A stretch of 64,000 nucleotides of DNA from Octopus sinensis (Eukaryota), in assembly GCF_006345805.1 (NCBI RefSeq), contig NC_043008.1, forward strand, positions 51,522,001 through 51,586,000. The letters run 5' to 3'. The notes beneath the pieces are model-generated. The model had not been told where the DNA came from. It made no database searches and saw nothing but the letters and a program-made list of their open reading frames with translations. Positions 3,399 to 48,171 of the stretch are shown here, one piece after another. The translations under genes and the position numbers were made by a program. Numbering within the stretch: the stretch's first letter is position 1; each line of letters begins with the position of its first letter.

Positions 3399-4437
3399 CA
3401 GGGGTTGGACAAAATAATTGGACATGTGTTAAATTCAATGAATATTTATCTAATACAGAATTGGTCCTCCTTTAGCTTTCTGAACAGCTTCAATACATAA
3501 AGGAATTGATTCATACAGCTTCCTGACTTCATTGAGAGGAATCTTGAGCCATTCTTCCTGCAAAATCTGCTTCAGCTGTTGCAGACACGTCGCTGGAAGG
3601 TAACAACTTCTAACTTGTCTCTCCAATATGCACCACTTGGACCAAGAGAATTCCAAGAAATGGCTGCCCAAACCATCACAAACTCTCCTCTATGCTTCAT
3701 TGTAAGAAGAAGGCAGTCTGGATTAAAAGCTTCCCCGGGCTGCCTCAACACAAAAACCTGCCCTGCAGTGAGGAAAAGAGAAAAACTAGGCTCATTGGAG
3801 AATATTACTTGCTCCCATTGGTCTGTCAACCAGCCATTGTGATCTCTACACCAGCTTAGCCTTTTCTGAATGTTTTGATGAGAAAGCAGAGGTTACCTGA
3901 TGGCGGCTCTTCCATGATATCTGGCTTTAATGAGCTCACTGCAAACAGTTTTTGTCAAAACTGGACTAGTCAGATGTTGACTCAACTCTGCAGTCATTTT
4001 AGGGGCAGTTGTCTGATTTTTGATCATAGTACGATTAAACAATCGTTGGTCTCTTTCAGTGAGATTCAGAGTCCTGCTGGATTTACTCCTCCTGCTGGAG
4101 GTTTTGCCCTCCTTCTCAAATTCAGTCATGGTCCTTGATTTGCTAGCTCTTCAAGAACCAAGGAGTTCAGCTATACTATTGACGGAAGCTCCTGCATTTG
4201 ACCTCCAACAAATATGTCCTTTTTCGAACTCAGTGAGGTCACACATCTTACCTTAACTTATACTACGATCTGAAAAAGAGATAGAAATAATCATTGAATT
4301 AGATTAATAAAACCATCTATAATACAAAAAAAAAAAAAGAAAATACCCTCACTTGAAATTTGGATGGATATTCTTAATATAATGGCTCGTTGAAATATTG
4401 GAGTTTTTACTGTTCCAATTATTTTGTCCAACCTCTG
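3399..4437 (-). mobile_element. Internally deleted Tc1 element with both TIRs and TA TSD
   Basis: caggggttggacaaaataattgga at 3399 is inverted to tccaattattttgtccaacctctg ending 4437, with TA on both sides. Minus-strand pieces: HTH (LTERDQR...TVCSEL), VIFSNEP, VMVWAAIS, C-terminal EEWLKIP...KAKGG. Confidence 0.9.
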
Positions 4438-5145: not shown

Positions 5146-5860
5146 GGTGATGTGTGTGCGTGTGTGTGTGCATGTATGTGTTTATATGTGTGTGCATGTG
5201 TTTATGTGTGTGTTTGTGTGCATGATGTGCATATGTGCGTTTGTGTGCTTGTGTGTGTGTGTGCATGTATGTATGTGTGTTTTTGTGCATGTGTGTGCAT
5301 GCATTTATGAGTGTGTGCCCTTGTGTGTGTGTGTGTGTGTGCATGTGTTTATGTGTGTGTTTGTATGCATGTGCATATGTGCATTTGTGTGTGCTTGTGT
5401 GTGTGTGTGTGTGTGCATGTATGTATGTGTGTTTTTGTGCATGTGTGTGTATGTATGTATGTGTGTTTTTGTGCATGTGTGTGTATGTATGTATGTGTGT
5501 TTTTGTGCATGTGTGTATATGTATGTATGTGTGTTTTTGTGCATGTGTGTATATGTATGTATGTGTGTTTTTGTGCATGTGTGTATATGTATGTATGTGT
5601 GTTTTTGTGCATGTGTGTATATGTATGTATGTGTGTTTTTGTGCATGTGTGTGTATGTATGTATGTGTGTTTTTGTGCATGTGTGTATATGTATGTATGT
5701 GTGTTTTTGTGCATGTGTGTATATGTATGTATGTGTGTTTTTGTGCATGGTGTTATGTATGTATGTGTGTTTTTGTGCATGTGTGTATATGTATGTATGT
5801 GTGTTTTTGTGCATGTGTGTGTATGTATGTATGTGTGTTTTTGTGCATGTGTGTGTATGC
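5146..5860. repeat. (GT/AT)-rich compound repeat that becomes a 34-bp minisatellite
   Basis: Unit gtatgtatgtgtgtttttgtgcatgtgtgtatat repeated about 13 times from about 5415. Confidence 0.9.
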
Positions 5861-14154: not shown

Positions 14155-14949
14155 TTATTTGACTTTATTTTTTCTGGTCTTCGTGGGTTGGGGTGAAGCC
14201 CTCCACATGAAACAGGAAAAACCATCTCCGACTAGGTAAATGCTGATTCCAAACAACCATAGAAGAATTATGAAGACAAACCTCTGTTGATTATTTAAGA
14301 TTTGAAGGATCGGGTAAACCCATATACCTTTAGCGAAGGCCAGGAAAAGGATCCATACCACGTAGATGCTAGTGTAGCAGAATGTGTAACCAATTCCACG
14401 AAGTTTGGGAGGATAACAATGAGGGACGAGGTACTTGTCCAAAAAGAGAAGGACCAATGGTAAAGTGTGCAAAATATGGTTCAACCAACCTGGAATGATT
14501 TCATCAAGGAAAGAAGGAAACACCAACTCGCGATCGAAATGGTAAATTAACCAAAATGTGATCACCACAAAAATTCCGACTGGGAAAACTATAGTAGCAT
14601 GAACGTGATCTATGACAATCTGCAGCTGTCTTACCTTGTTTTGATCGCATTTACTCACGCTTCGCCATTTCATGAGGTCATACAGTAAAGAAATGACAAA
14701 ATACAACGTTTGTATCCATATATTCCAGTATGTGAGGTATTTAAATTTACCAAAATATGTATTCCAACCGTACTGAATTTCGAAGGTGTCGGTGTAGGTG
14801 CCAAAAGCTAAAAGAATGAATGATATCAGGTGAAAAGAGCAAATATACAAAGATAGATTCGATATTTTTGCAGGAGAAGAAGAAGAAAGGGGTGAGGCCA
14901 TAGTATGCTCTTTATGTTGAGAGACTTTCCTTTCACGTTTTATTGCCAT
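14155..14949 (-). CDS. AIG1: AIG1/ADTRP (FAR-17a) family multi-pass membrane hydrolase, intronless
   Basis: Open frame with GKFKYLTYWN (catalytic Thr motif), FWLIYHFDRELVFP, GWLNHILHTLP (catalytic His motif), KGIWVYPIL and several hydrophobic helices. The ATG at 14949 has a strong accATGG context; alternative starts are 14985 and 14901. Confidence 0.92.
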   Translation of the reverse strand: MAIKRERKVSQHKEHTMASPLSSSSPAKISNLSLYICSFHLISFILLAFGTYTDTFEIQYGWNTYFGKFKYLTYWNIWIQTLYFVISLLYDLMKWRSVSKCDQNKVRQLQIVIDHVHATIVFPVGIFVVITFWLIYHFDRELVFPSFLDEIIPGWLNHILHTLPLVLLFLDKYLVPHCYPPKLRGIGYTFCYTSIYVVWILFLAFAKGIWVYPILQILNNQQRFVFIILLWLFGISIYLVGDGFSCFMWRASPQPTKTRKNKVK

Positions 14950-15317
14950 GGTGTCGCCTTTTTGTTTCCTCTCTCTCTCTCTCATCTCAGTACACTACTG
15001 TCTCAATCAATGTCACTACTGCTATCGATGGGAGCACTCGAAACGAACAGCAAAGAAGCGGATGTGCTTATATATGAATATATATATTATCTTTAGGATC
15101 TTGTCCTTTTGATAATAATATAACATATATGAATATATATTTTATTATATATAATAATAATATAATATATATAAATATATTTTTTATGAATGCGAAACCA
15201 TTTGTCACTCTATGACCGGAGATATATTTAACTTCATCTAAATATGTGTGTGTGAATGAATGATTATATTACATGTGTGTTTGTGTATAATTAATGCACA
15301 GTCTCGCAATGCCTACG

Positions 15318-18710: not shown

Positions 18711-19579
18711 GTATATATATGTATTTCTATATATATTTATTTCTATTGGACCATATTATTAATAAATTAAATCTTGCTCTACTTTTATCTCCATTTCTTA
18801 GTCTATTTTTTATCCCTTTACAAATATTAGTTAGTTAATTCTCTTAATTTCTTTTAAATTTTTAAAAATTAATTCTGCTATTACCAGACCTATCGTAGTG
18901 TATTGTGATGTGATATAATATATCAAAATAATATAATATAATATAGTGTAGTATATTATAGTTTAGTATAATAATAATATAATTGTTTAATTCATTTAAA
19001 AACATTATGTATGTATTATAGTTTAGTATAATAATAATATAATAGTTTAATTTCATTAAAAACAACCCCATTTTTCTTTCCTTTCTAATGACCTCTTTGT
19101 AACCTGACAATCTATTAATAGTAACATTTATAAATAAAGAAATAAATTGTTGACCTCAGTTCGAATTTGTTCCAAACAAACTTAGACTTTTTTGTTAGTA
19201 TCAAATTGTGCTCATCCCCTTAGCTTCCCCTTTCCTTTCTCTTTGACAGCTTAAATAGCAGTAACTGATTAAATTCCTACCCCCTTCCTCCTCTTTCTGT
19301 GATTCTTTGAAAATTTCATTAACAATCTGAACCACTACAATATAAGACTGTCATTTTTGCTTCTCATTCGGACTCCCTGATATTTTCGCATGATTGTACC
19401 CTAAATCTCTCCACAAAACTGGATTACGAACTATAAGGACATACACAAATTTTGTAAGTTCAAGACTTTTTCATCGGATCTCCCAAAAAATCGAACTTAT
19501 CTGCGATTCTTGTAAATTTCAATAACAATCTGTTCCTCTACACGATATGACAGTCACTATGTTTTTACTCAGACTTTCC

Positions 19580-21232
19580 GGTTAATATAGGGCGTAACAA
19601 ATATCAGAAAATAAAAAAAAAAATGTGTGTAATAGGTGTAAAACAACTTCCTATGAACGAATATGAAAAAAAAAAATTCGCGCACGCGAAAGGGGGGTGG
19701 GGGAGAGGCCTCGGAAAATTCACATCGGGAAGTTCCGAAAGCGTCTGAGGAGCTGACCCGGGCACCAAAACAAAAAAAAAATAGTGTAATATGTGTAAAA
19801 CAACTTGCTCTAAACGAATATGACAAAAAAAAATGCGCTCTCGCGAAAGAGGGGTGGGGGAGAGGCCTCGGAATATTTATATCGGGAATTTCCGAAAGCG
19901 TCTGAACCGGGCACAAAACAAAAACAAAAACAGCGTAATAGGTGTAAAACAACTTGCTCTAAACGACTATCATGAAAAAAATGCGCGCTCGCCAAAGGGG
20001 GGTGGGGGAGAGGCTTCGGAAATTTCACATCTTCAGTCCACGGCCTTTAAACTAAAGAAAATAGTGTAATTGGTGTAAAACTACTTGTTCTAAACGAGTA
20101 TCAAGAACACACACTCACACATGAATCATAAACTCCGTATTTCGCAAAAAAAAAAATAAAGAGAAGAAATTCTGGAAAAAGTGAAGAAATGTTGGATCTC
20201 CGCCATGTGAATCAAAATACGTGTCAGAAACATCTTGAAATACTAGAAATTATGTTACGAAAATGATAATGTATACATACCTCTTTGAGTGGTCCATCGA
20301 TAATGATGATAAAGAAATGAGTTGGATTTGAACTCAGAATATTGACTAACACAACTACATACTACAAGACTCAAAATATTCAGCCAAGTCACCACCCTTT
20401 AACTAGCAATAATAATAACATCAATAACATAACAGCCAAAAGATTTATTTGTTCTGAAAAAACAATCATAGTAAATAAATATGTTCTTAATATTCACATT
20501 CATGTGCACAGTTAAACACACTTACATACAAACAGTCACGCATGCATAATACAGAACGGAACACATAAATGAAGGATGCATTACTTAGTATATATTACAT
20601 CTAGAGAATTTTGATTAATAAGTCAATATGCAAATTATAAAGATAATTAATTGCTTTACTAAACAGTTTTGTAAAGGTGAAAAAATAAATTTGGGAAAAA
20701 AATACACGCCAAAACTAATTAATAAAGGATAATTAGGGAAGGATTGACACAAATAATAATTTTTTGTGTCTCTTTTTTTCTGATAAATGCATCTTAATAA
20801 GTGAGAAGAATTGCATATATCTGAACTATTTCAAAGAAAAGCATAAATTTAATGTTTAAAATAGCTTTAACCAAGGAATGAGATCCAACATTTCTTCACT
20901 TTTTCCAGAATTTCTTCTCTTTATTATTTTTTTTTGCGAAATACGGAGTTTCTCCCCCACCCCTCTTTCGCGAGAGCGCATTTTTTTTGTCATATTCGTT
21001 TAGAGCAAGTTGTTTTACACATATTACACTATTTTTTTTTTGTTTTGGTGCCCGGGTCAGCTCCTCAGACGCTTTCGGAACTTCCCGATGTGAATTTTCC
21101 GAGGCCTCTCCCCCACCCCCCTTTCGCGTGCGCGAATTTTTTTTTTCATATTCGTTCATAGGAAGTTGTTTTACACCTATTACACACATTTTTTTTTTGA
21201 TTTTCTGATATTTGTTACGCCCTATATTAACC
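19580..21232. mobile_element. Foldback-type non-autonomous DNA transposon, Merlin-like (GG termini, 8-bp TSD)
   Basis: Starts ggttaatatagggcgtaac and ends gttacgccctatattaacc. TSD gactttcc at 19572-19579 and 21233-21240. Arms 19580-20200 and 20880-21232 are built of ~150-bp subrepeats; the right arm lacks left 19864-20130. Confidence 0.85.
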
Positions 21233-21602
21233 GACTTTCCTATACATGATGTGGCAGTCACTTTGCCTCTTACTCGGATTTTCAGAAATTTTGCATGACT
21301 GTATCCGAAAATTTCTTCATACAACTTGATCAAATATTCAATATGAGCTATATGTAGACATGCATGAATTCTATAGGTTTAAAACCTTTCATCGGATCTC
21401 CATGAATCGAACTTTCTTCAATGCAGTTAATCTTACAACCTCTTTTGTATCTACCCCTTTTGATGTTTGGGAATTCTCCGATATTTTTTCGGCTGACGAG
21501 TACGAGCCATCTGTATTCACTGCATTTTTTGTAGCTTATTAAAGATGTCCTCGTACGAAACGATCGTACCGAGATTTTAATCCATTCTTGTTGCTTTTTT
21601 CC

Positions 21603-22485
<883 letters not shown>

Positions 22486-25108: not shown

Positions 25109-25809
25109 TAAATCAGATCAGAGTCTGGTACAGCCACTGGCTCTCCAGACCTCAGTCAAAACGTCCAACCTATGCCAGCATGGAAAATGGATGTTATACA
25201 ATGATGATGATGATATTACATACATATATATATATAATATAATCACCTCCAAATGTCTCTCTCACAGACTCCACCCACCCCTTGAGAACAACCTTTTTAT
25301 GGTGGTGGGAGGAGCTACTTAGCAACATTTCATTTGTCAGCCTTTCTTCGTCCTTTAATCATTGTTCCACCCACCTTAGTGATTCATTCCCCCTCCCTTA
25401 CACACACTGAACCACATGCACTACGCTTGCCTCTCTCTTTCTCTCTTTCTATGTAATTAATTCAGAGCCAACTATCTGTAACTCTGAAAAGTGTCATATT
25501 AATTATTGTTTCAAATTTTGTCACAAGGCCAGCAATTTCGGGGGATAAAGTCGATTACATGCTCAACTGATACTTATTCTATCGACCCTCATTATTAACA
25601 GAACTCTTAACATTGCTACTCCATCGCAGAGTGACGACTACGTCTTTAAACAGGAAAACTTGATTAACAACAATCACTGTTTTCTAGTATAGTGAAGAAA
25701 ATAGAATAAAACACGGATAAATCCCAATACAATATAAATAAATCTCACTCACGTTTTACTATATTTTCAGGAGTTACCTCCCTGGTTTACAAAACTATAT
25801 GACTGAAAT

Positions 25810-25840
<31 letters not shown>

Positions 25841-26259
25841 TATAGATATATATTCAAAGAAAAAATTTTTAATTGATCTAAAAGAAGAAAAAATCGAAAT
25901 AATAAAAAAGTGGTGTTAATTTCTTGTTATTTAATTACATTCATTCCGCATTTGGAAAGTAAAAGTAAACAAAAATAATGGAGAATACAAAAAAGTAACT
26001 TGGTTTTCTTAAACGAAACGAATAATTACATATAAATAGTTCATGATATTTTATTGCTTTCATTTCTTTACACAAACGTAAAACAAACAAAACAAATTGG
26101 TTCACTTAATGAATTAACATTAGCGAAAAGTAAACACTTGTTACTAAAAATAAAAAAAAAAACGCATCATTAAAATTAGAATTGAAACTCAGATGTAATT
26201 ATTTATTTGAAAGTTTTTGAAAGTACTAGATCAAAGCAACCACACATATATATATATAT

Positions 26260-26293
<34 letters not shown>

Positions 26294-26476
26294 ATATAAA
26301 TTATGCAATTTCCTCGCTAACTAAAAAGCTAGAGGTAATGATTTACTAATTTTGAAACGCATATTTTATTCGTTTCGGCAATTCGTGTTTTTGTATTTGC
26401 CATTATTTCAGTTATCGGTTTTAACTTCACCGCTTCTCCGAGAAGTTCGTAGAAAGTTTTTCTCCGAGTTTTAATT

Positions 26477-27418
26477 ATGACTGAAATATGTGAACGTGAG
26501 AAACCGAAAATTCGGGTAAAAATCGTGGACGCGATCATTAATAAAGAAGATCTAATTCAAAAGGAATATACTCTACACGATATTCAACAGGTAACTAAGA
26601 ATATTGATAGTACAATTAAGTTCCTTGCATCGGTCGGTTTACTTCACAATTCAGTGGTATGTTGTACCCAGCACATGACTTTTGTGACTCGTAAACAATG
26701 TTCAGATGGAAAAGTTTGGCACTGTTCTGTGTGCAGATCTTATCGTAGCATTAGGAATGATTCTTTCTTTTCTAAGTCTTCTATCCGTCTAACCCGCCAT
26801 CTTGAACTTATTTATTGGTGGACGTCGATTGAGTCCACGCAGTCTGTTGTTATGAATCAGGTTGGTCTTGGTTCAGAGGCCATAGTTAATTGGTATAACT
26901 ATTTTCGAGATGTCTGTGCCATGTGGTGCATCGATCACCCTACGAAGATCGGAGGAGAAGGAGTGAAGGTGGATATCGCCGAGTCAAAATTTATGCACCG
27001 CCAATATCATCGTGGTCATTATAAGGAAGGCCACTTGATCCTTGGGATGGTGGAGCGCCACAGTCTTAATTCCGTCCTTGTACCTGTCCCTGATCAAAGT
27101 GGTGCCACTTTGTTACCTATCATCCTTGAACATGTGTTGCCAGGCACCTGCATAGTAACGGATGGCTGTCATTCCTATGAAAAACTTCAAGAATCAGCTG
27201 GTCACAATCTTCAGTTTATGGATCCCAAAGATGAAAAACTCAACAGAAACAAAATAGAAGGGACGTGGAATAACGTGAAAAATAGATATAAACATTTGTA
27301 TGGACTTTCTGATAATCTGTTCTCGACTTACTTACAAGAATTCAGTTGGCGTCGTGTTCACAAAGATAATACATTTATGTCATTTATTTACTGGGTTCGG
27401 CATTATTATCCTGTGTAA
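26477..27418 (+). CDS. Merlin/IS1016 (ISXO2-like, IS1595 DDE) transposase-derived protein, intact 313-aa ORF, first catalytic Asp replaced by Ala
   Basis: Zn-finger-like C..M...DG..WHC..C...SIR..SFF, KIGG.G..VDIAESKF (family VEIDESKF), GMVER, TLLPII..HV.PG..IVTDG, NKIEGTW..VK, YLQEF.WR. No TIRs found by eye. Confidence 0.85.
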   Translation: MTEICEREKPKIRVKIVDAIINKEDLIQKEYTLHDIQQVTKNIDSTIKFLASVGLLHNSVVCCTQHMTFVTRKQCSDGKVWHCSVCRSYRSIRNDSFFSKSSIRLTRHLELIYWWTSIESTQSVVMNQVGLGSEAIVNWYNYFRDVCAMWCIDHPTKIGGEGVKVDIAESKFMHRQYHRGHYKEGHLILGMVERHSLNSVLVPVPDQSGATLLPIILEHVLPGTCIVTDGCHSYEKLQESAGHNLQFMDPKDEKLNRNKIEGTWNNVKNRYKHLYGLSDNLFSTYLQEFSWRRVHKDNTFMSFIYWVRHYYPV

Positions 27419-27579
27419 TGATTTTAGTGATGAAAAGCTTTTTTTTTTTATTTATTAAAGATGAAAAAAAATCAAGAATGTAAATAATTTTGTTATTGAA
27501 TACTTTCGTTCTTTCAATACAAGCACATGTATTGATGGCGATTTAAAAAAAAATTACACGTAACCCCCCCCCCCCCTGC

Positions 27580-38200: not shown

Positions 38201-38220
38201 ATATATATATATATATATAT

Positions 38221-38264
<44 letters not shown>

Positions 38265-38382
38265 GTATATTATATATATATATATATATATGTATATGTA
38301 TATATATTATATATATATGTATATATATATATATGTATATGTATATATATATATTATATATGTATATGTATATATGTATATG

Positions 38383-38413
<31 letters not shown>

Positions 38414-38427
38414 GTATATATATATAG

Positions 38428-38511
<84 letters not shown>

Positions 38512-38520
38512 ATATGTATA

Positions 38521-39722
38521 TGTATGTATGTGCCTCTGTCCCAGCTGTTGGTACATTTTGTGTATAAGGGAGTTTCATTCCACTGCCCCTTCGTCTGTAC
38601 CTCATGTCGGGCTGTCGGTTCATCCAATTCTGTGAAGAGGAAGATGTCTAGTTCTTTTTGAAGATATCTACTTCCACCTTATGCAAATTTCTTAATTTTT
38701 GTGGCAGGGCATTGAAGGGCTGTGAGCCTTTAAACCCTAGACTATTGCAGTACCTAGTCCTGAATTTAGATGGAGTGGACGGTACCTTTGGTACAATACA
38801 ATGGCAGCCAGTTCTGGCATTTGTATAACACTCAATGCCAAAGTTAGATACTAGCCCTTCTAGGATTTTCCATATGTATATTATTGCATATCTCTCATGC
38901 CTTCACTCCAGGGAGTGAAGCTGTAGTTTTCTCAGCTTATCCCTGTAGCTCATCCACTGCACTGTTTCAATTTTTTGGTGTAGTGGCATTGGACTGCTTC
39001 AAACTCTGCTCTTAGTTTGGCACTATATGGGGAGCAGTAGTCCAGGTGGCTGAGAACAAAAGTTCTCCACAGGGTCAACATAGTTTCTTGCTCTCGTCTT
39101 GAAGGATCTCAGTATCCATCCAGCCAGTTGTCTACACTTTGATGCCATCTTGCTAATGTGTTTATAAAATGATGCGTCATTGCACATACTGATCCCCAAG
39201 TCTTTCACTGCCTGTGACCCAGGGATTGTAGTGCCTTCAGATCCTGTACAGTAGATTGTACTGTATTCATGAGCTGATAGTGCAGTACTTGAAATTTTCT
39301 AGCATTAAACTGCATGTTATTTATTTTGGCCCATTTGTATATTGAATTTATGTCCCACTGTAAGCTTGTGACATCATCTTAGTTTTTTATTGCCTGTGAT
39401 ATTTTGTATCATTAGCATAGCTAGTGACAGTGGCTGTCCAAGTAACCGTGGGCATATCTAAGAGGGCTATTATGAACAGTAATAGCCCCAGAACAGTTCT
39501 CTGTGGGACACCACTTAGGATTTGAGTTTCCTCAGAAAGGGAATCATTGGCTGCAAACACCTGACTGATTTTAAGGAAGTCATGCAGCCACTTTCCCAGT
39601 TTACCAGCAACGCCAAGGTCACATAGCTTATGGCTTATCATGCCATGATCCACCTTATTAAATGCTTTTACAAAGCCTAGGTATATCACACTGGCATCAG
39701 AATGGTGAGGGAGCTGTTTCAA
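38521..39722 (-). mobile_element. CR1-like LINE 3' portion (RT to tail)
   Basis: YLGFVKAFNKVDH, SGVPQRTVLG, SYANDTK, DLGISMCNDASF, ...FNALPQKLRNL...DIFKK, then a (CATA/TA)n tail. Confidence 0.85.
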
Positions 39723-44279: not shown

Positions 44280-44559
44280 TGTAGGATGACGTCAGCAGCT
44301 GGAGAGCTGGCTGGAGCTTGGGGATGACCGGAAGAAGGTGCAGGAGTGACGTGCGCGCAGACAGATGAGGATTGGGCCTTTTCAATCGGGGTAACCGACA
44401 GTGCTGGACGTATAAGCACTTCGACAAGGTAAAGGAAAAGCAGCTGCTATTTTTAGCATTCGGGTCGGGCTACGTGGAAGAGTGCGTTACCACCAGAGAG
44501 GACTGCATCGACGAAGAGAAGGTAGGTGTCTTTACTTCAAATCTCCTGCTTACACCACA
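44280..44559 (+). repeat. 5' LTR
   Basis: tgtaggatgacgtca...ttacaccaca. Confidence 0.93.
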
Positions 44560-47500
44560 AGCTATTTCGGCACTCCACATAAGACATCACCACGATGGCA
44601 GCTAAAATCAGGATCGCCAGCGACGTTATCAGACCCTTTAATGGTGAGGGCGATGTAGTGGCCTGGATGCGTAAAATCAGGCTTGTGGCGAGATTGCAAG
44701 GCATTAGCGATGTGGTGAGCCTTATGGCACTATATTTGGAAGGGAGCGCGTTGACTCTGTATCTCGAGATGGGCGAAGAAGAAAGTCTGAGTGAGGAGAA
44801 GATTGAGCGACATCTGAGAGAGTCTTACACCGAGTGTGAATATACAGCCTTTGTTAAGCTGGGCACGATTAGATGGATGGGAGAGCAGGTGGATGAATAC
44901 GCGATGGGGGTGCGCAGGCTGGCCACACTGGCTGGGTTTACAGGAGAAAGCCTGGACAGAGCAGCGCGACTGGCGTTCGTAAGTGGGTTGCCTGACGATG
45001 TAGGGATTCGACTGCAGCAATTGTCCGGGGGTAAAAAGATGGCGCTGAGTGAACTTGAGACTCAAGCCCGCGTGTTGATGCAAAACACTGGACGGAAGGC
45101 AATAGCGATGGCGGTAACGGAGGAGCATAAAGACGGACGACGGCCGGAGAAAGACGCGAAGAAGCCTACCTTGCAATGACAACGGCCGTTCTCAGGCCGG
45201 TGTTTTAGATGTCAGGGGTCGCACATGGCGAGGAAGTGTATGCAACCAAGGCCCGTCTGCTATCGATGCAGGCAGACAGGGCACATCGCCCGTGATTGCG
45301 ACCAGGGAAACGACCGTGGGGAAGTTGCTGCCTCTCGAACTTTCCCCGCAAACGAGTAGAGATGCTTTTGGAGACGCTGCCCTTAATTGATGTCGAGGCC
45401 GAGGGTAAGTCGTTCAAGGCCCTCGTGGATACAGGTTGCACGACCACCCTTGTGACGAAGAAATGGAATGGGGCAAGTAGCGTCTGGGCGATCGACGGCA
45501 GCGAAATCCGATGCAGCAATGTAGAGATAGTGGTGCGAGGCGCGACGCTAAGGCTGCAGGTAATTGTTGTTGACGAGGTTGATGTGGTAATGGGGATGGA
45601 CGCCATCAACCGCCTCAGTTGTGTCAGTATTGTAGGAGATGTATGTTCGGAAGCGTGGCGGTATTGTGCACTGTGAGTCAGGATCGCCAGAGAGAGCAGA
45701 GCCCCGCGAGGGACTGCGCCGCTTACACCATTAAGGACAAGGATTTTCAGGCGGCGTTCGATGGTCAGCGGTGGACGATAGAGTGGCAATGGAAAGACGA
45801 GCCCCAGATGCTGAAAAACAGGGTGAGCTGCTATCAGCATACCCTGAAAGGCCACGCCGGGGTTGAGTTTGAAGACGAGGTAGAAAGGTGGATCGAGGAA
45901 GGGGTCCTTGTCCCGTGGGAGGTGGAGGTAGTGGGTGGAGTGCTACCTCTGATGTCGGTGGTGCAGCCGATGAAGGGAAAAGTCAGATCAGTACTGGAGT
46001 TTAGAGAGCTAAACGAGCATATATCATGCCACACGGGAGGTGAGGTGACGGACGTTTGTGGCGAGATGTTACATGTGTGGAGACAGTCGACCAAGGCAGC
46101 GACGATTGTCGACTTGAAATCGGCATACTTGCAGCTCCATGTGAGTGACAAACTGTGGCAATATCAGCTGGTGTGGTACAAGGGCCCGACGTACTGTTTA
46201 ACCAGGCTGGATTATGGACTGAATTCCGCTATGAAGATCATGGCGGCAGTGCTTAAGTCCGTCCTAGGGAAAGAGGACAAGATAAGAAAGGCAACCAGTT
46301 CTTACATAGATGACATTTTGGTGGACGAAATTGTAGTGCCAGCCAACGAGGTAGTGAGACATCTGGAGAAGTTCGGACTGATTGCGAAGCCACCGGAGCC
46401 GATGGAAGGGGGAGCTGCACTGGGGCTGAAGCTGTGAAGAGATAGATTGGGTGAGTTGGTGTTCAGGAGAGGAAATGAAATCCCAGAGCTGAGTCCCAGC
46501 GTCAGCAGGAGAGAGCTGTTCTCGGTGTGTGGGAAGTTGGTCAGTCACTACCCGATCGAGGGGGAGAGTTGGGGCGACAAGGTGAGAGAAGGGACGGTGG
46601 TGATGATGCAGGAAATCTTAGAGAGGACAAGAGTGGAAGACCCGGTCAGGGGGAACTGGTATGTGCCCAAGACGGAATGCGGGACCATCTGGTGTGATGC
46701 TAGCAGTATAGCGATAGGGGTTGTGTTGGAGATCGAAGGCGGTGAGGTGGAGGACGTAGCCTCGCTTCGGAAAGCAGATGACTTTAACCACATCAATGTT
46801 GCCTAATTAGACACGGTGCTGAAGGGGGTGAACTTGGCCCTGAAATGGGGGCTGTGCTCAATTGAAATCCGGACGAATTCGGCCACTGTGCTTGTCTGGG
46901 TAGGATCGGTGATCACCGGTGAGAGGAGAGTTCGGACGAAAGGTGCCACGGAGATGTTGATGAAGTGCTGTCTAGGAGTCCTAGGAGAACTGATTGCTGA
47001 GTTCGGACTGAAGCTGATCATGGTTTTCATGCCTTCGGAGAGAAGCAGGGCAGACGCACTGACTATGGTGAAAAGGGCGTGGTTGGAGGAGCTGGAGAAG
47101 GGATAGAGATAGCTGAAAAAAATTAAAAATGGATCGTAAAGAGGACCGTAACTAAATACCACAAGGCATTTTGTCCGTTCAGTGCTGGAATGGAAAGGGA
47201 TAGCTGCAATGTGTCGGTTGGATGACTCCGAACTGAAGAGACTGCACACTAGACATTACTTGGGTGTGGAAAGGACCTTGTATCTCACGAAGAAGATTGA
47301 TGCTGACGTCACTAGGAGAAGCATCTGGAAAGTGGTCGGGAGCTGTGACAGGTGTCAGTCCATTGACCCTGCTTCATGCGGGCATGAGCAAGGAAACCTT
47401 TCGGTGGAGCACAACTGGAAGAGGCTACCTGTGGATGTGATGCACTACCGTCAGGGAATGTATCTCTCCATGGTCGACTGTGGAGGGAGTCGAGAACAGG

Positions 47501-48171
47501 CATTGCTGATGAGATTGCGCAGATTTTGAATGGGATATTTTTGGAGAGGGGTCCTGTCGAAGAACTGCTAATGGACAACGGGGCAGCATTTCATACGGAA
47601 GCGTTGAGGGATATGCTTGACTGGTGGAAAGTGCGTCGCTTGTTCAGAGCAGCGTATAGGCTGAGTGGTAACAGAATCATAGAGAGGCACCAGCGGACAG
47701 TCAAGGCCATAGCGGAAAGAGGGCACATTTCGCCGCTGGAAGCAGTTTTCTGGTACAATATGTCTCCCCGATCTGGACAAGCTGAAGAATCTGTGCTACA
47801 AAGAGCGATATTTAAATATGAATGGAGGTGTCTGAGTAAAGTGCCGGAGTGTTACGAGGGAGAGAAGGGACCTGCTTATGTGAAAATAGGGGAGGAAGTC
47901 TGAGTTAAGCCGCCGAAGGCATGCTGTACGTCTCAATGGAGCAGAGAAACGGTGATAGCGGTCAATTCCAGAAACAACATCTCCGTGGATGGAATGCCGC
48001 GACATGTCTTAGGCCTTCGCAGGATTGTTGCTTTGTCGGATGATGATTGTGGAGAGGAGGAGAATGAGGTGCCTAGCCTGAGAAGTTCTCGATGCGCAAG
48101 GCGCCCTCCCGGTTGGATGGTGGACTTCAATATGAAATAAAGAGAATGTGATCTTTAAGATCAGGGTGGTG

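What the first reader, a model, noticed from the sequence alone, without database searches (positions are those of the whole stretch)
26477..27418. Intact but catalytically disabled Merlin transposase: candidate domesticated gene
Seen: a 313-aa ORF with no stops or frameshifts, while most other coding TE relics here are broken. The motif VDIAESKF has Ala168 (GCC, 26978-80), one base from Asp (GAC). D229 and E261 are retained but only 31 residues apart, versus about 36 as I recall for the family, implying an in-frame ~5-aa loss (the H-x-T-V-N segment). The Zn-finger region is intact, no TIRs or TSD are visible, and both flanks are CpG-rich. Known: domesticated transposases often keep DNA binding and lose DDE chemistry, and Merlin domestication is rarely described. 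Inferred: a host DNA-binding protein or a repressor of Merlin MITEs.
Basis: partly seen in the sequence, partly recalled or inferred. Interest (0 to 1): 0.72.

Follow-up and report, generated by a model that had tools for sequence, protein, structure and literature searches.

The report
Domesticated, catalytically dead Merlin transposase gene
An octopus gene descended from a Merlin "cut-and-paste" transposon has lost its catalytic site and its transposon ends, yet natural selection has kept it intact in two copies across octopus species, so it looks like a jumping gene recruited for a host function.

Summary
The 313-aa ORF at 26477-27418 (+) is real. The window is Octopus sinensis. The ORF is a DDE_Tnp_IS1595 (Merlin) transposase homologue with Ala (GCC) where 126 of 139 relatives have the first catalytic Asp.

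The defect is old and shared, not a single recent mutation. The same Ala and nine other substitutions at family-conserved core positions occur in four relatives: the O. vulgaris orthologue, a paralogue 3.5 Mb away, both O. bimaculoides counterparts, and a more distant octopod contig.

Pairwise dN/dS among these copies is 0.19-0.30 (dS 0.28-0.36). All ORFs are exactly 942 nt, while their flanks carry about 18 indel events per 700 bp. No TIRs are detectable, whereas a 52%-identical DDE-intact relative shows about 110-nt TIRs starting 5'-GG with the same method. The nearest Asp-bearing relatives are only 52-56% identical.

One correction: the D-to-E spacing is shortened by 2 aa relative to close relatives, not 5, and the VNH motif is substituted, not deleted.

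The RNase H-like core is the most constrained part (omega about 0.1). Domestication is well supported. The function (DNA binder or Merlin repressor) remains inference. Expression and O. bimaculoides synteny could not be tested.

The parts
26477..27418 (+). Single-exon ORF of 313 aa (paralogue 'A'): a Merlin/IS1595-type transposase homologue with a dismantled active site
   Evidence: identical protein at the orthologous O. vulgaris locus L001
26660..26734 (+). Cys cluster C62, C63 ... C83-x2-C86 (putative zinc ribbon). Sits on beta-hairpins with pLDDT above 90
   Evidence: Synonymous TGT/TGC changes at C62 and C63 among paralogues. No Pfam Zn-finger hit
26972..26983 (+). D166-I-A168-E169 on beta-strand 1. 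The Ala168 codon GCC (26978-26980) replaces the first catalytic Asp. E166D is also clade-specific
27161..27169 (+). Second catalytic Asp, D229, retained. The adjacent family-conserved Trp is replaced by Cys231
27197..27205 (+). A241-G242-H243 in place of the family 'V-N-H' motif. The D2-E interval is 2 aa shorter than in the nearest relatives
27242..27259 (+). N256-R257-N258-K-I-E261 in place of the family 'H-T-N-x-I-E'. The catalytic Glu is retained; His and Thr are lost
26365..26384 (+). 20-nt block upstream of the ATG (TTTATTCGTTTCGGCAATTC). It is 100% identical in paralogue B and in the distant octopod contig, although the surrounding flank diverges by 28-40%
26451..26465 (+). 15-nt conserved block (AGAAAGTTTTTCTCC) just upstream of the ATG
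27468..27519 (+). 52-nt conserved block downstream of the stop. It is 96% identical to the distant octopod contig and 89% over 74 nt to paralogue B. Likely a 3'UTR or regulatory element
   Evidence: No significant RNA fold
25654..27541 (.). Segment shared with paralogue B (L003 9182-11129): about 820 bp of upstream sequence, the ORF and about 120 bp downstream. It is a duplicated gene-plus-flank unit without TIRs
26001..26750 (.). CpG-non-depleted stretch over the putative promoter and 5' end (CpG o/e 1.7-2.0; window median 0.41)

Best explanation
This is a domesticated (exapted) Merlin transposase gene of octopods.

Proposed history. An ancestral octopod Merlin element lost its terminal inverted repeats. 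In the ancestor of the clade its active site was dismantled: D168A plus E166D, K176Q, R207Q, W231C, V241A, H256N, T257R and a 2-aa shortening between the second Asp and the Glu. The immobile gene, with about 0.8 kb of upstream sequence, was later duplicated. The copies are A (this window) and B (3.5 Mb away in O. vulgaris). The duplication predates the O. bimaculoides / O. vulgaris-sinensis split.

What is shown: both copies have since evolved under purifying selection.

What is inferred: the protein keeps a folded RNase H-like core, an N-terminal helical and Cys-rich module and the C-terminal helices, but cannot catalyse DDE chemistry. It most likely acts as a sequence-specific DNA-binding and multimerising protein. 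The likeliest role is a trans-dominant regulator that occupies Merlin ends or poisons Merlin transpososomes. Alternatively it is a lineage-specific transcription or chromatin factor.
For: Shown:
1. Family membership and the register of the catalytic residues.
2. The same Ala codon (GCC) and ten shared substitutions at family-conserved positions occur in A_sinensis, A_vulgaris, B_vulgaris and the Logan contig L004. All ten lie between residues 166 and 257. At protein level they also occur in O. bimaculoides A and B.
3. Nei-Gojobori dN/dS: A-B 0.21, A-L004 0.30, B-L004 0.19, with dS 0.28-0.36. Fisher p from 2e-9 to 2e-15.
4. All ORFs are exactly 942 nt. The flanks have 17-18 indel events per 700 bp and 2-3 times the substitution divergence. 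Neutral simulation gives P(no premature stop) = 0.015 per lineage at 10% divergence.
5. No TIRs in three loci. Positive control: the DDE-intact relative P0176 in L010 has about 110-nt TIRs starting 5'-GG.
6. Low copy number. Two exhaustive-style protein searches found only these clade members. The next relatives are at most 57% identical.
7. L004 aligns to the B locus over its whole 2.5 kb, beyond the A/B shared segment. This is consistent with a positional orthologue.
8. Reciprocal protein pairing: A_sin-A_bim 299/313 and B_vul-B_bim 184/188, against 274-278/313 between the A and B types.
9. The NJ tree shows a monophyletic clade with a long stem and short tips.
10. The AF2 model (pLDDT 83.6, pTM 0.79) keeps the beta1-beta5/alpha RNase H-like topology, with Foldseek hits to integrase cores, Mos1, ISCth4 and IstA.
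11. There are conserved non-coding blocks and a CpG-non-depleted 5' flank.
Against: - No expression evidence could be obtained.
- Positional synteny of A outside the very close pair O. sinensis / O. vulgaris is not shown. O. bimaculoides DNA was not retrievable.
- Only three independent coding sequences underlie dN/dS.
- A pair from a neighbouring octopus Merlin clade (P0003/P0004) also gives dN/dS 0.31. dN/dS below 1 alone therefore does not discriminate in this superfamily.
- Genome-wide copy number, including broken copies, was not measured.
- Asp166, two residues before Ala168 on the same face of strand beta1, leaves a small chance of residual or shifted catalysis.
- The DNA-binding and repressor function is pure inference. 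The N-terminal domain gave no significant structural match.
Confidence: 0.75

Rival explanations
1. An ordinary dead Merlin copy: a young element with one inactivating mutation, or an old relic whose ORF is intact by chance, evolving neutrally.
For: Merlin is abundant and recently active in Octopus. Lopes 2021 (PMC8101967) reports 191 Merlin proteins in O. bimaculoides. PMC13282606 lists 11 recent insertions in O. vulgaris. A Merlin-like non-autonomous element inserted about 7 kb away after the sinensis/vulgaris split. The O. sinensis versus O. vulgaris comparison is itself uninformative: 0.3% divergence in the ORF against 0.1-0.5% in the flanks.
Against: The defect is shared by copies with dS up to 0.36. 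dN/dS is 0.19-0.30. There are no indels in 942 nt, against about 18 per 700 bp in the flanks. There are no TIRs. No close Asp-bearing relatives exist.
Confidence: 0.04
2. A still TE-borne gene: a low-copy Merlin subfamily that encodes a non-catalytic (regulatory) protein or a non-canonical transposase. It would be mobilised in trans or by itself, with ends too far out or too degenerate for my search.
For: The A/B duplicated unit is compact (about 1.9 kb). dN/dS below 1 is also seen between copies of the neighbouring clade C. Lopes 2021 reports Merlin families with highly imperfect TIRs. Asp166 could conceivably substitute for Asp168.
Against: No inverted repeat above shuffle level within 300 bp (permissive scoring) or within 1300 bp upstream and 700 bp downstream (stricter scoring). 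Only two copies per genome among called proteins. Ten conserved core residues were lost together. The B locus in L003 and L004 shares flanks beyond the duplicated unit.
Confidence: 0.1
3. A domesticated gene that still has nuclease or recombinase activity, using a rearranged active site (D166/D229/E261).
For: The strongest purifying selection is on the RNase H-like core (omega 0.06-0.14). D229, E261 and E169 are invariant. E166D is clade-specific and lies on the same strand face as position 168.
Against: In 139 relatives the first Asp is nearly invariant. It is lost here together with the conserved K176, R207, W231, H256 and T257. An independent octopus copy (P0003) lost positions 168, 207, 256 and 257 in parallel. 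This suggests these residues form one functional unit that decays once catalysis is gone. From general knowledge of DDE enzymes, D-to-A at the first carboxylate abolishes catalysis.
Confidence: 0.08
4. The ORF is conserved for a reason other than its protein, for example an overlapping non-coding or antisense function, or homogenisation by gene conversion.
For: ORF divergence between A and B (9.3%) is lower than expected from their flanks (about 30%), and lower than B versus L004 (11.5%). This hints at A/B gene conversion.
Against: Gene conversion does not produce a fivefold excess of synonymous over non-synonymous change, nor frame preservation. There is no long antisense ORF and no Rfam hit.
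Confidence: 0.03

Closest known systems
Autonomous Merlin DNA transposons. Examples: the TIR-flanked element encoding P0176 in locus L010, and the Merlin families of Feschotte 2004 and Lopes et al. 2021 (PMC8101967).
   Same: Same protein family (PF12762). Same length (313 aa). Same N-terminal CC...CxxC module, RNase H-like core and C-terminal helices. 52% identity to P0176.
   Different: The autonomous elements have VEIDESKF, TD[GS]W, VNH and HTNxIE motifs, long TIRs starting 5'-GG, and 8-9-bp TSDs. The octopus gene has Ala at the first Asp, ten core substitutions, no TIRs or TSDs, two fixed copies, and purifying selection despite the dead site.
Putatively domesticated Merlin-related ORFs in protists (Stentor, Symbiodinium, Perkinsela), proposed by Lopes et al. 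2021, PMC8101967.
   Same: Preserved Merlin ORFs without TIRs or TSDs. Some lack the DDE motif. Some were amplified by segmental duplication and are syntenic between species.
   Different: Those are in ciliates, dinoflagellates and a kinetoplastid. No selection tests are quoted in the passages I read. The present case is in an animal, with dN/dS and indel evidence. I found no paper describing a Merlin-derived host gene in a metazoan (held library only).
Catalytically inactive domesticated DDE transposases from other superfamilies. From my own knowledge: CENP-B/Abp1 (pogo), FHY3/FAR1 (Mutator-like), DAYSLEEPER (hAT); and TE-encoded or host-encoded transposase-derived repressors such as the P-element KP protein.
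   Same: A transposase-derived, immobile, single- or low-copy host gene that has lost catalytic carboxylates yet is under purifying selection. Presumed DNA-binding or regulatory role.
   Different: Different superfamily (Merlin/IS1595). It is not fused to host domains. Here the ex-catalytic fold is the most constrained region. The function is unknown.

Membership tests
Merlin / IS1595 transposase superfamily (protein homology) | DDE_Tnp_IS1595 (PF12762) domain above the Pfam gathering score | tested here: met
   59 bits against a cutoff of 27, E=7.4e-16. 5,724 relatives at E<=1e-3 in the representative library.
Merlin / IS1595 transposase superfamily (protein homology) | NCBIfam NF033547 'IS1595 family transposase' above its cutoff (a bacterial equivalog-domain model) | tested here: not met
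   57.1 bits against a cutoff of 75. Expected for a eukaryotic Merlin branch.
Active Merlin transposon | Complete DDE catalytic triad | tested here: not met
   First Asp replaced by Ala168 (Asp in 126 of 139 relatives). D229 and E261 present.
Active Merlin transposon | Terminal inverted repeats (24-462 bp, terminal 5'-GG) | tested here: not met
   No inverted repeat above shuffled controls in A, B or L004. Positive control L010 scores 89 against a null maximum of 18.
Active Merlin transposon | 8-9-bp target-site duplication | tested here: inconclusive
   Without definable ends no TSD can be sought. None is apparent at the borders of the A/B shared segment.
Active Merlin transposon | Multiple dispersed near-identical copies | tested here: inconclusive
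   Only A and B appear among called proteins of O. vulgaris, O. sinensis and O. bimaculoides. There is one copy in the window. A whole-genome nucleotide census is not possible with these tools.
Domesticated (exapted) transposase gene | Purifying selection on the coding sequence after immobilisation or inactivation | tested here: met
   dN/dS 0.19-0.30, p<=2e-9. Zero indels. Neutral simulation.
Domesticated (exapted) transposase gene | Orthologues retained in several species at syntenic positions | tested here: inconclusive
   A is at the same locus in O. sinensis and O. vulgaris. The B locus of O. vulgaris is collinear with contig L004 of a more distant octopod over 2.5 kb. O. bimaculoides has both A-type and B-type proteins, but its DNA could not be fetched.
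Domesticated (exapted) transposase gene | Transcription and translation in the host | not testable with these tools
   No RNA-seq access. The only indirect hints are the conserved flanking blocks and the CpG-non-depleted 5' flank.

The most novel reading that the evidence does not exclude
Octopods carry a pair of Merlin-derived genes whose product is a catalytically dead 'decoy' transposase. It would still recognise Merlin ends and co-assemble with active Merlin transposases. That would make it a host-encoded dominant-negative repressor, kept under selection because Merlin elements are still jumping in these genomes. A Merlin-like element inserted about 7 kb from this gene after the O. sinensis / O. 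vulgaris split. This would be the first Merlin domestication in an animal. It would also be a rare case where the ex-catalytic fold, not just the DNA-binding domain, is what selection preserves.
Probability: 0.25. Interest if true: 0.7.

Novelty: new member of a known kind. Interest (0 to 1): 0.52.

Why it matters
Domesticated transposases are a recurrent source of new regulators and genome-defence factors, but none derived from the Merlin superfamily has been described in an animal in the literature I could search.

This case has several features that make it useful. It is clean: a single exon, two paralogues and a dismantled active site. It is lineage-restricted to octopods, whose genomes are unusually rich in Merlin and other transposons. 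It sits in a genome where Merlin-type elements are demonstrably still moving. Whether transposase domestication serves as transposon control can therefore be tested directly.

It also gives a natural 'mutational map' of the Merlin active site, a superfamily with no solved structure. Positions 168, 207, 256 and 257 were lost together twice.

Tried and rejected
1. Fetching O. bimaculoides DNA for the A orthologue: P0023 is not on record.
2. Reaching the O. bimaculoides B locus through the neighbouring zf-MYND/MSS51-like gene, using a 60-aa exon peptide: no candidates.
3. Identifying the species of run SRR11869394 from the literature: no paper.
4. Using the O. sinensis versus O. vulgaris comparison as a selection test: the species are too close (ORF 0.32%, flanks 0.14-0.46%). 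The only signal is 3 synonymous against 0 non-synonymous changes.
5. Apparent TIR remnants seen by eye near 26350 and 27500 (TTGAAA...TATTC): rejected, because permissive alignment scores fall below the shuffled 95th percentile.
6. Similarity between the gene's flanks and the termini of the 19580 element or the L010 TIRs: none.
7. The 3' conserved block as a structured RNA: the hairpin is not better than shuffles (z = 0.15), and there is no Rfam family.
8. A solved structure for the family: none by sequence.
9. Foldseek matches. The full model gives only weak matches to integrase and transposase cores (best E about 0.01). The N-terminal 160 aa give only non-significant homeodomain-like three-helix matches (E >= 2).
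10. A Pfam zinc-finger assignment for the N-terminus: none in 16 relatives.
11. My own early note of a 'shared 5-aa deletion' was wrong and is corrected to 2 aa.

Full report
**Identity of the window and the ORF**

The window is Octopus sinensis chromosome CM016870.1; locus L002 matches window 16477-37418 at 100%. The ORF at 26477-27418 (+) is real. It is 313 aa with an ATG start, and an in-frame stop lies 10 codons upstream. It matches Pfam DDE_Tnp_IS1595 at E=7.4e-16, 59 bits against a gathering score of 27. It falls below the cutoff of the bacterial NCBIfam IS1595 model. tblastn finds no second copy in the 64-kb window.

**Register of the catalytic residues**

I aligned the query with 138 relatives of 230-460 aa taken from the homologue searches.
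- Ala168 sits in the column that is Asp in 126 of 139 sequences. The family motif is V-E-I-D-E-S-K-F; here it is V-D-I-A-E-S-K-F.
- D229 aligns with an Asp present in 128 of 139 sequences.
- E261 aligns with a Glu present in 120 of 139 sequences.
- The spacing from position 168 to D229 is 60 residues, the family mode. [quoted passage not shown] 2021 (PMC8101967).
- D229 and E261 are separated by 31 residues. The nearest DDE-intact relatives have 33. The clade-specific shortening is therefore 2 aa, and 'VNH' is replaced by 'AGH' or 'ADH' rather than deleted.

No solved structure exists for the family by sequence search. Residue roles therefore rest on the family alignment and the published DDE assignment.

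**The defect is ancient and shared**

The protein database holds five members of this clade:
- the window protein, encoded identically in O. sinensis and O. vulgaris (L002, L001);
- a paralogue 'B' in O. vulgaris on the same chromosome, 3.47 Mb away and in the same orientation (P0022, L003);
- two O. bimaculoides UniProt entries, one A-type (P0023, 299/313 identical to A) and one B-type (P0024, 184/188 identical to B);
- P0002, 82% identical, on a 2.5-kb Logan contig from run SRR11869394 (L004).

All five carry Ala168. Of 63 positions conserved in at least 70% of the other family members, the clade deviates at 11. Ten of these deviations are absent from its closest relatives: E166D, D168A, K176Q, V188I, R207Q, W231C, V241A, V248M/I, H256N and T257R. 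Every one lies between residues 166 and 257, inside the catalytic core, and none lies in the N-terminal half. DDE-intact relatives deviate at only 1-5 of the 63 positions. The next most similar proteins are 52-57% identical and mostly have the canonical motifs. An NJ tree gives a monophyletic clade with a long stem and short tips, nested among octopus and other Merlin transposases.

**Selection**

Nei-Gojobori estimates:

| Pair | dN/dS | dS |
|---|---|---|
| A vs B_vulgaris | 0.21 | 0.28 |
| A vs L004 | 0.30 | 0.32 |
| B_vulgaris vs L004 | 0.19 | 0.36 |

- Fisher tests on synonymous and non-synonymous counts give p = 8e-12, 2e-9 and 2e-15.
- All divergence among these sequences postdates the shared D168A. 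The constraint therefore acted on the catalytically disabled protein, not on an active 'master' transposase. This matters because a pair from a neighbouring octopus clade (P0003/P0004) also shows dN/dS 0.31. dN/dS alone is not diagnostic in this superfamily.
- All four ORFs are exactly 942 nt.
- The homologous flanks carry 17-18 gap events per 700 bp upstream and 21-39% substitution divergence there. The ORF shows 9-12%. Third codon positions (14-18%) diverge twice as fast as positions 1+2 (7-10%).
- A neutral simulation gives only 1.5% probability of escaping a premature stop at 10% divergence per lineage.
- The O. sinensis / O. vulgaris pair is too close to be informative: 3 synonymous and 0 non-synonymous changes, with flanks at about 0.4%.

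Constraint by region:

| Region (residues) | omega |
|---|---|
| 57-100 (Cys region) | 0.5-0.65 |
| 101-160 (helical) | about 0.1 |
| 161-230 (RNase H-like core) | 0.06-0.11 |

The ex-catalytic scaffold and the helical region before it are the most constrained parts.

**No transposon ends**

- Local alignment of up to 1300 bp upstream against the reverse complement of 700 bp downstream found only A/T low-complexity matches in A, B and L004.
- A permissive search within 300 bp scored below the 95th percentile of shuffles in all three loci.
- The same procedure on L010 found about 110-nt near-perfect TIRs beginning 5'-GGCGATC (score 89 against a null maximum of 18). L010 is an ENA contig encoding P0176, 313 aa, 52% identical, with intact VEIDESKF / TDS / HTNTIEG motifs.
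- This matches the published Merlin hallmarks of TIRs of 24-462 bp, a terminal GG and an 8-9-bp TSD.

**Locus anatomy**

- A and B share about 820 bp upstream, the ORF and about 120 bp downstream (window about 25654-27541).
- L004 aligns with the B locus across its whole length, including about 500 bp further upstream that A lacks. L004 is therefore best read as the positional orthologue of B.
- Flank divergences are A-B 0.31, A-L004 0.39 and B-L004 0.21. This suggests the duplication predates the split from the L004 species. The ORF distances (A-B smallest) hint at some A/B gene conversion.
- Three short non-coding blocks are almost invariant among A, B and L004 although their surroundings are diverged: 26365-26384, 26451-26465 and 27468-27519. 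The last is 96% identical to L004 over 52 nt. They are absent from other Merlin clades.
- The 5' flank is strongly CpG-non-depleted, with o/e 2.0 against a window median of 0.41.
- These features fit a host gene with its own promoter and UTRs, but that reading is inference.

**Structure**

- AlphaFold2 with a 16-sequence alignment gives pLDDT 83.6 and pTM 0.79.
- The model has short helices at 23-52, beta-hairpins at 61-91 carrying C62, C63, C83 and C86, helices at 105-153, and then a beta1-beta5/alpha RNase H-like core with C-terminal helices.
- Confidence is lowest (60-74) between D229 and about residue 280, where the motif losses lie.
- Foldseek against the PDB returns weak but coherent matches to retroviral integrase catalytic cores and to the Mos1, ISCth4 and IstA transposases (best E about 0.01, probability up to 1.0).
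- The N-terminal 160 aa modelled alone (pLDDT 89.5) give no significant match, only homeodomain-like three-helix hits at E >= 2.
- No Pfam zinc-finger model hits any relative, although the four Cys are conserved family-wide.

**Mechanism**

Shown: the gene is an immobile, low-copy Merlin-derived ORF. It has a dismantled active site and is maintained by purifying selection in at least four taxa and two paralogues.

Inferred: the protein cannot perform DDE catalysis. It is retained for a structural activity that needs the RNase H-like scaffold, meaning DNA (end) binding and/or multimerisation. I favour a regulatory role toward Merlin elements, acting as a decoy or dominant negative. Three points support this.
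- Merlin is abundant in octopus: 191 proteins in O. bimaculoides.
- Merlin is recently active: 11 recent insertions in O. vulgaris (PMC13282606).
- The window itself holds a fresh Merlin-like insertion (see below).

A lineage-specific transcription or chromatin factor is the main alternative. Residual catalysis via Asp166 is unlikely but not excluded.

**Comparison with what is known**

By homology it is a member of the Merlin/IS1595 transposase family. It fails the defining features of an active Merlin transposon: the triad and the TIRs are not met, and TSD and copy number are inconclusive. It meets the core criteria of a domesticated transposase for selection and loss of ends. Synteny is only partly shown and expression is untested.

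Merlin domestication has been suggested only for protists (Stentor, Symbiodinium, Perkinsela). I found no report for an animal or for cephalopods, within the limits of the held library.

**Verdict**

The domestication interpretation is well supported (confidence about 0.75). The proposed function is untested. It is a new member of a known kind, of moderate to good interest.

Noticed in passing
window 19580-21232 (TSD copies at 19572-19579 and 21233-21240); empty site at L001 ~3534-3541: A 1653-bp non-autonomous element with ~285-bp TIRs (98.9% identical). Its termini are 5'-GGTTAATATAGGGCG...CGCCCTATATTAACC-3', it has internal ~157-bp subrepeats, and it is flanked by an 8-bp TSD, GACTTTCC. The orthologous O. 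vulgaris site is empty, with a single GACTTTCC. The element therefore inserted after the O. sinensis / O. vulgaris split (flank divergence ~0.4%). The GG terminus, 8-bp TSD and long TIR are Merlin hallmarks, but the superfamily is not proven. Its termini occur nowhere else in the window and do not resemble the gene's flanks.
   Followed up: partly
L008 4001-4921 (O. bimaculoides LOC106877575, P0003) versus L005/L006/L007 (P0004): A second octopus Merlin clade (56% identical to the query). The O. bimaculoides copy has independently lost the same active-site positions (D168L, R207T, H256S, T257K), while the O. sinensis/vulgaris copy keeps the full DDE. The pair has dN/dS 0.31. No TIRs were found. 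This may be a second domestication or a decaying relic.
   Followed up: partly
L005 (CM016860.1) and L007 (CM016861.1): About 7 kb around the P0004 gene is 99.6% identical on two different O. sinensis chromosomes, and 98-99.8% identical to one O. vulgaris locus. This is either a very recent segmental duplication or an assembly duplication.
   Followed up: no
L010 2471-4113 (ENA ERZ25069412 contig): An apparently complete autonomous Merlin element. It has ~110-nt TIRs starting GGCGATCTTTCG, a subterminal repeat of the same motif, and a 313-aa DDE-intact transposase. A mariner-type transposase gene lies next to it. The host organism is unknown.
   Followed up: partly
window 14155-14985 (-): An intact 276-aa single-exon ORF with a strong FAR-17a/AIG1 domain (E=4e-49). 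It is probably an intronless AIG1/ADTRP-like gene or a retrocopy, ~11.5 kb upstream of the Merlin-derived gene.
   Followed up: no
window 27468-27519: A 52-nt block downstream of the stop codon, nearly invariant among A, B and the distant octopod contig. It contains a 7-bp inverted repeat (TATTGAA...TTCAATA) with one compensatory change in B. The predicted fold is no better than shuffles.
   Followed up: yes
window ~44500-48000 and 56637-57971 (-): A G+C-rich, G-skewed stretch (GC 0.47-0.55) that contains a gag-like ORF followed by CCHC zinc-knuckle motifs in a broken frame. This looks like a retroelement relic. A separate 444-aa ORF carries RVT_1 plus a weak PHD finger hit.
   Followed up: no
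L003 1-9273 (-): In O. vulgaris, paralogue B lies ~730 bp from the annotated 5' end of a zf-MYND/MSS51_C gene on the opposite strand, a possible divergent pair. The annotated first coding exon (MSDSFVLHLFVFYIILFLCPK...) looks doubtful. About 90 bp of it falls inside the segment duplicated to locus A.
   Followed up: partly
proteins P0027 (1611 aa) and P0028 (1750 aa): These are the top hits of the representative search. They contain 14 and 11 separate Merlin-like stretches respectively. They are probably gene models that fuse tandem or nested Merlin copies.
   Followed up: no
window 5151-5859, 21603-22485, 38201-38529: A large TG-rich minisatellite (68/102-bp units). It explains the extreme GC skew and the overlapping ORFs at 5-6 kb. 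There are also two long (TA)n arrays of 0.9 and 0.3 kb.
   Followed up: no
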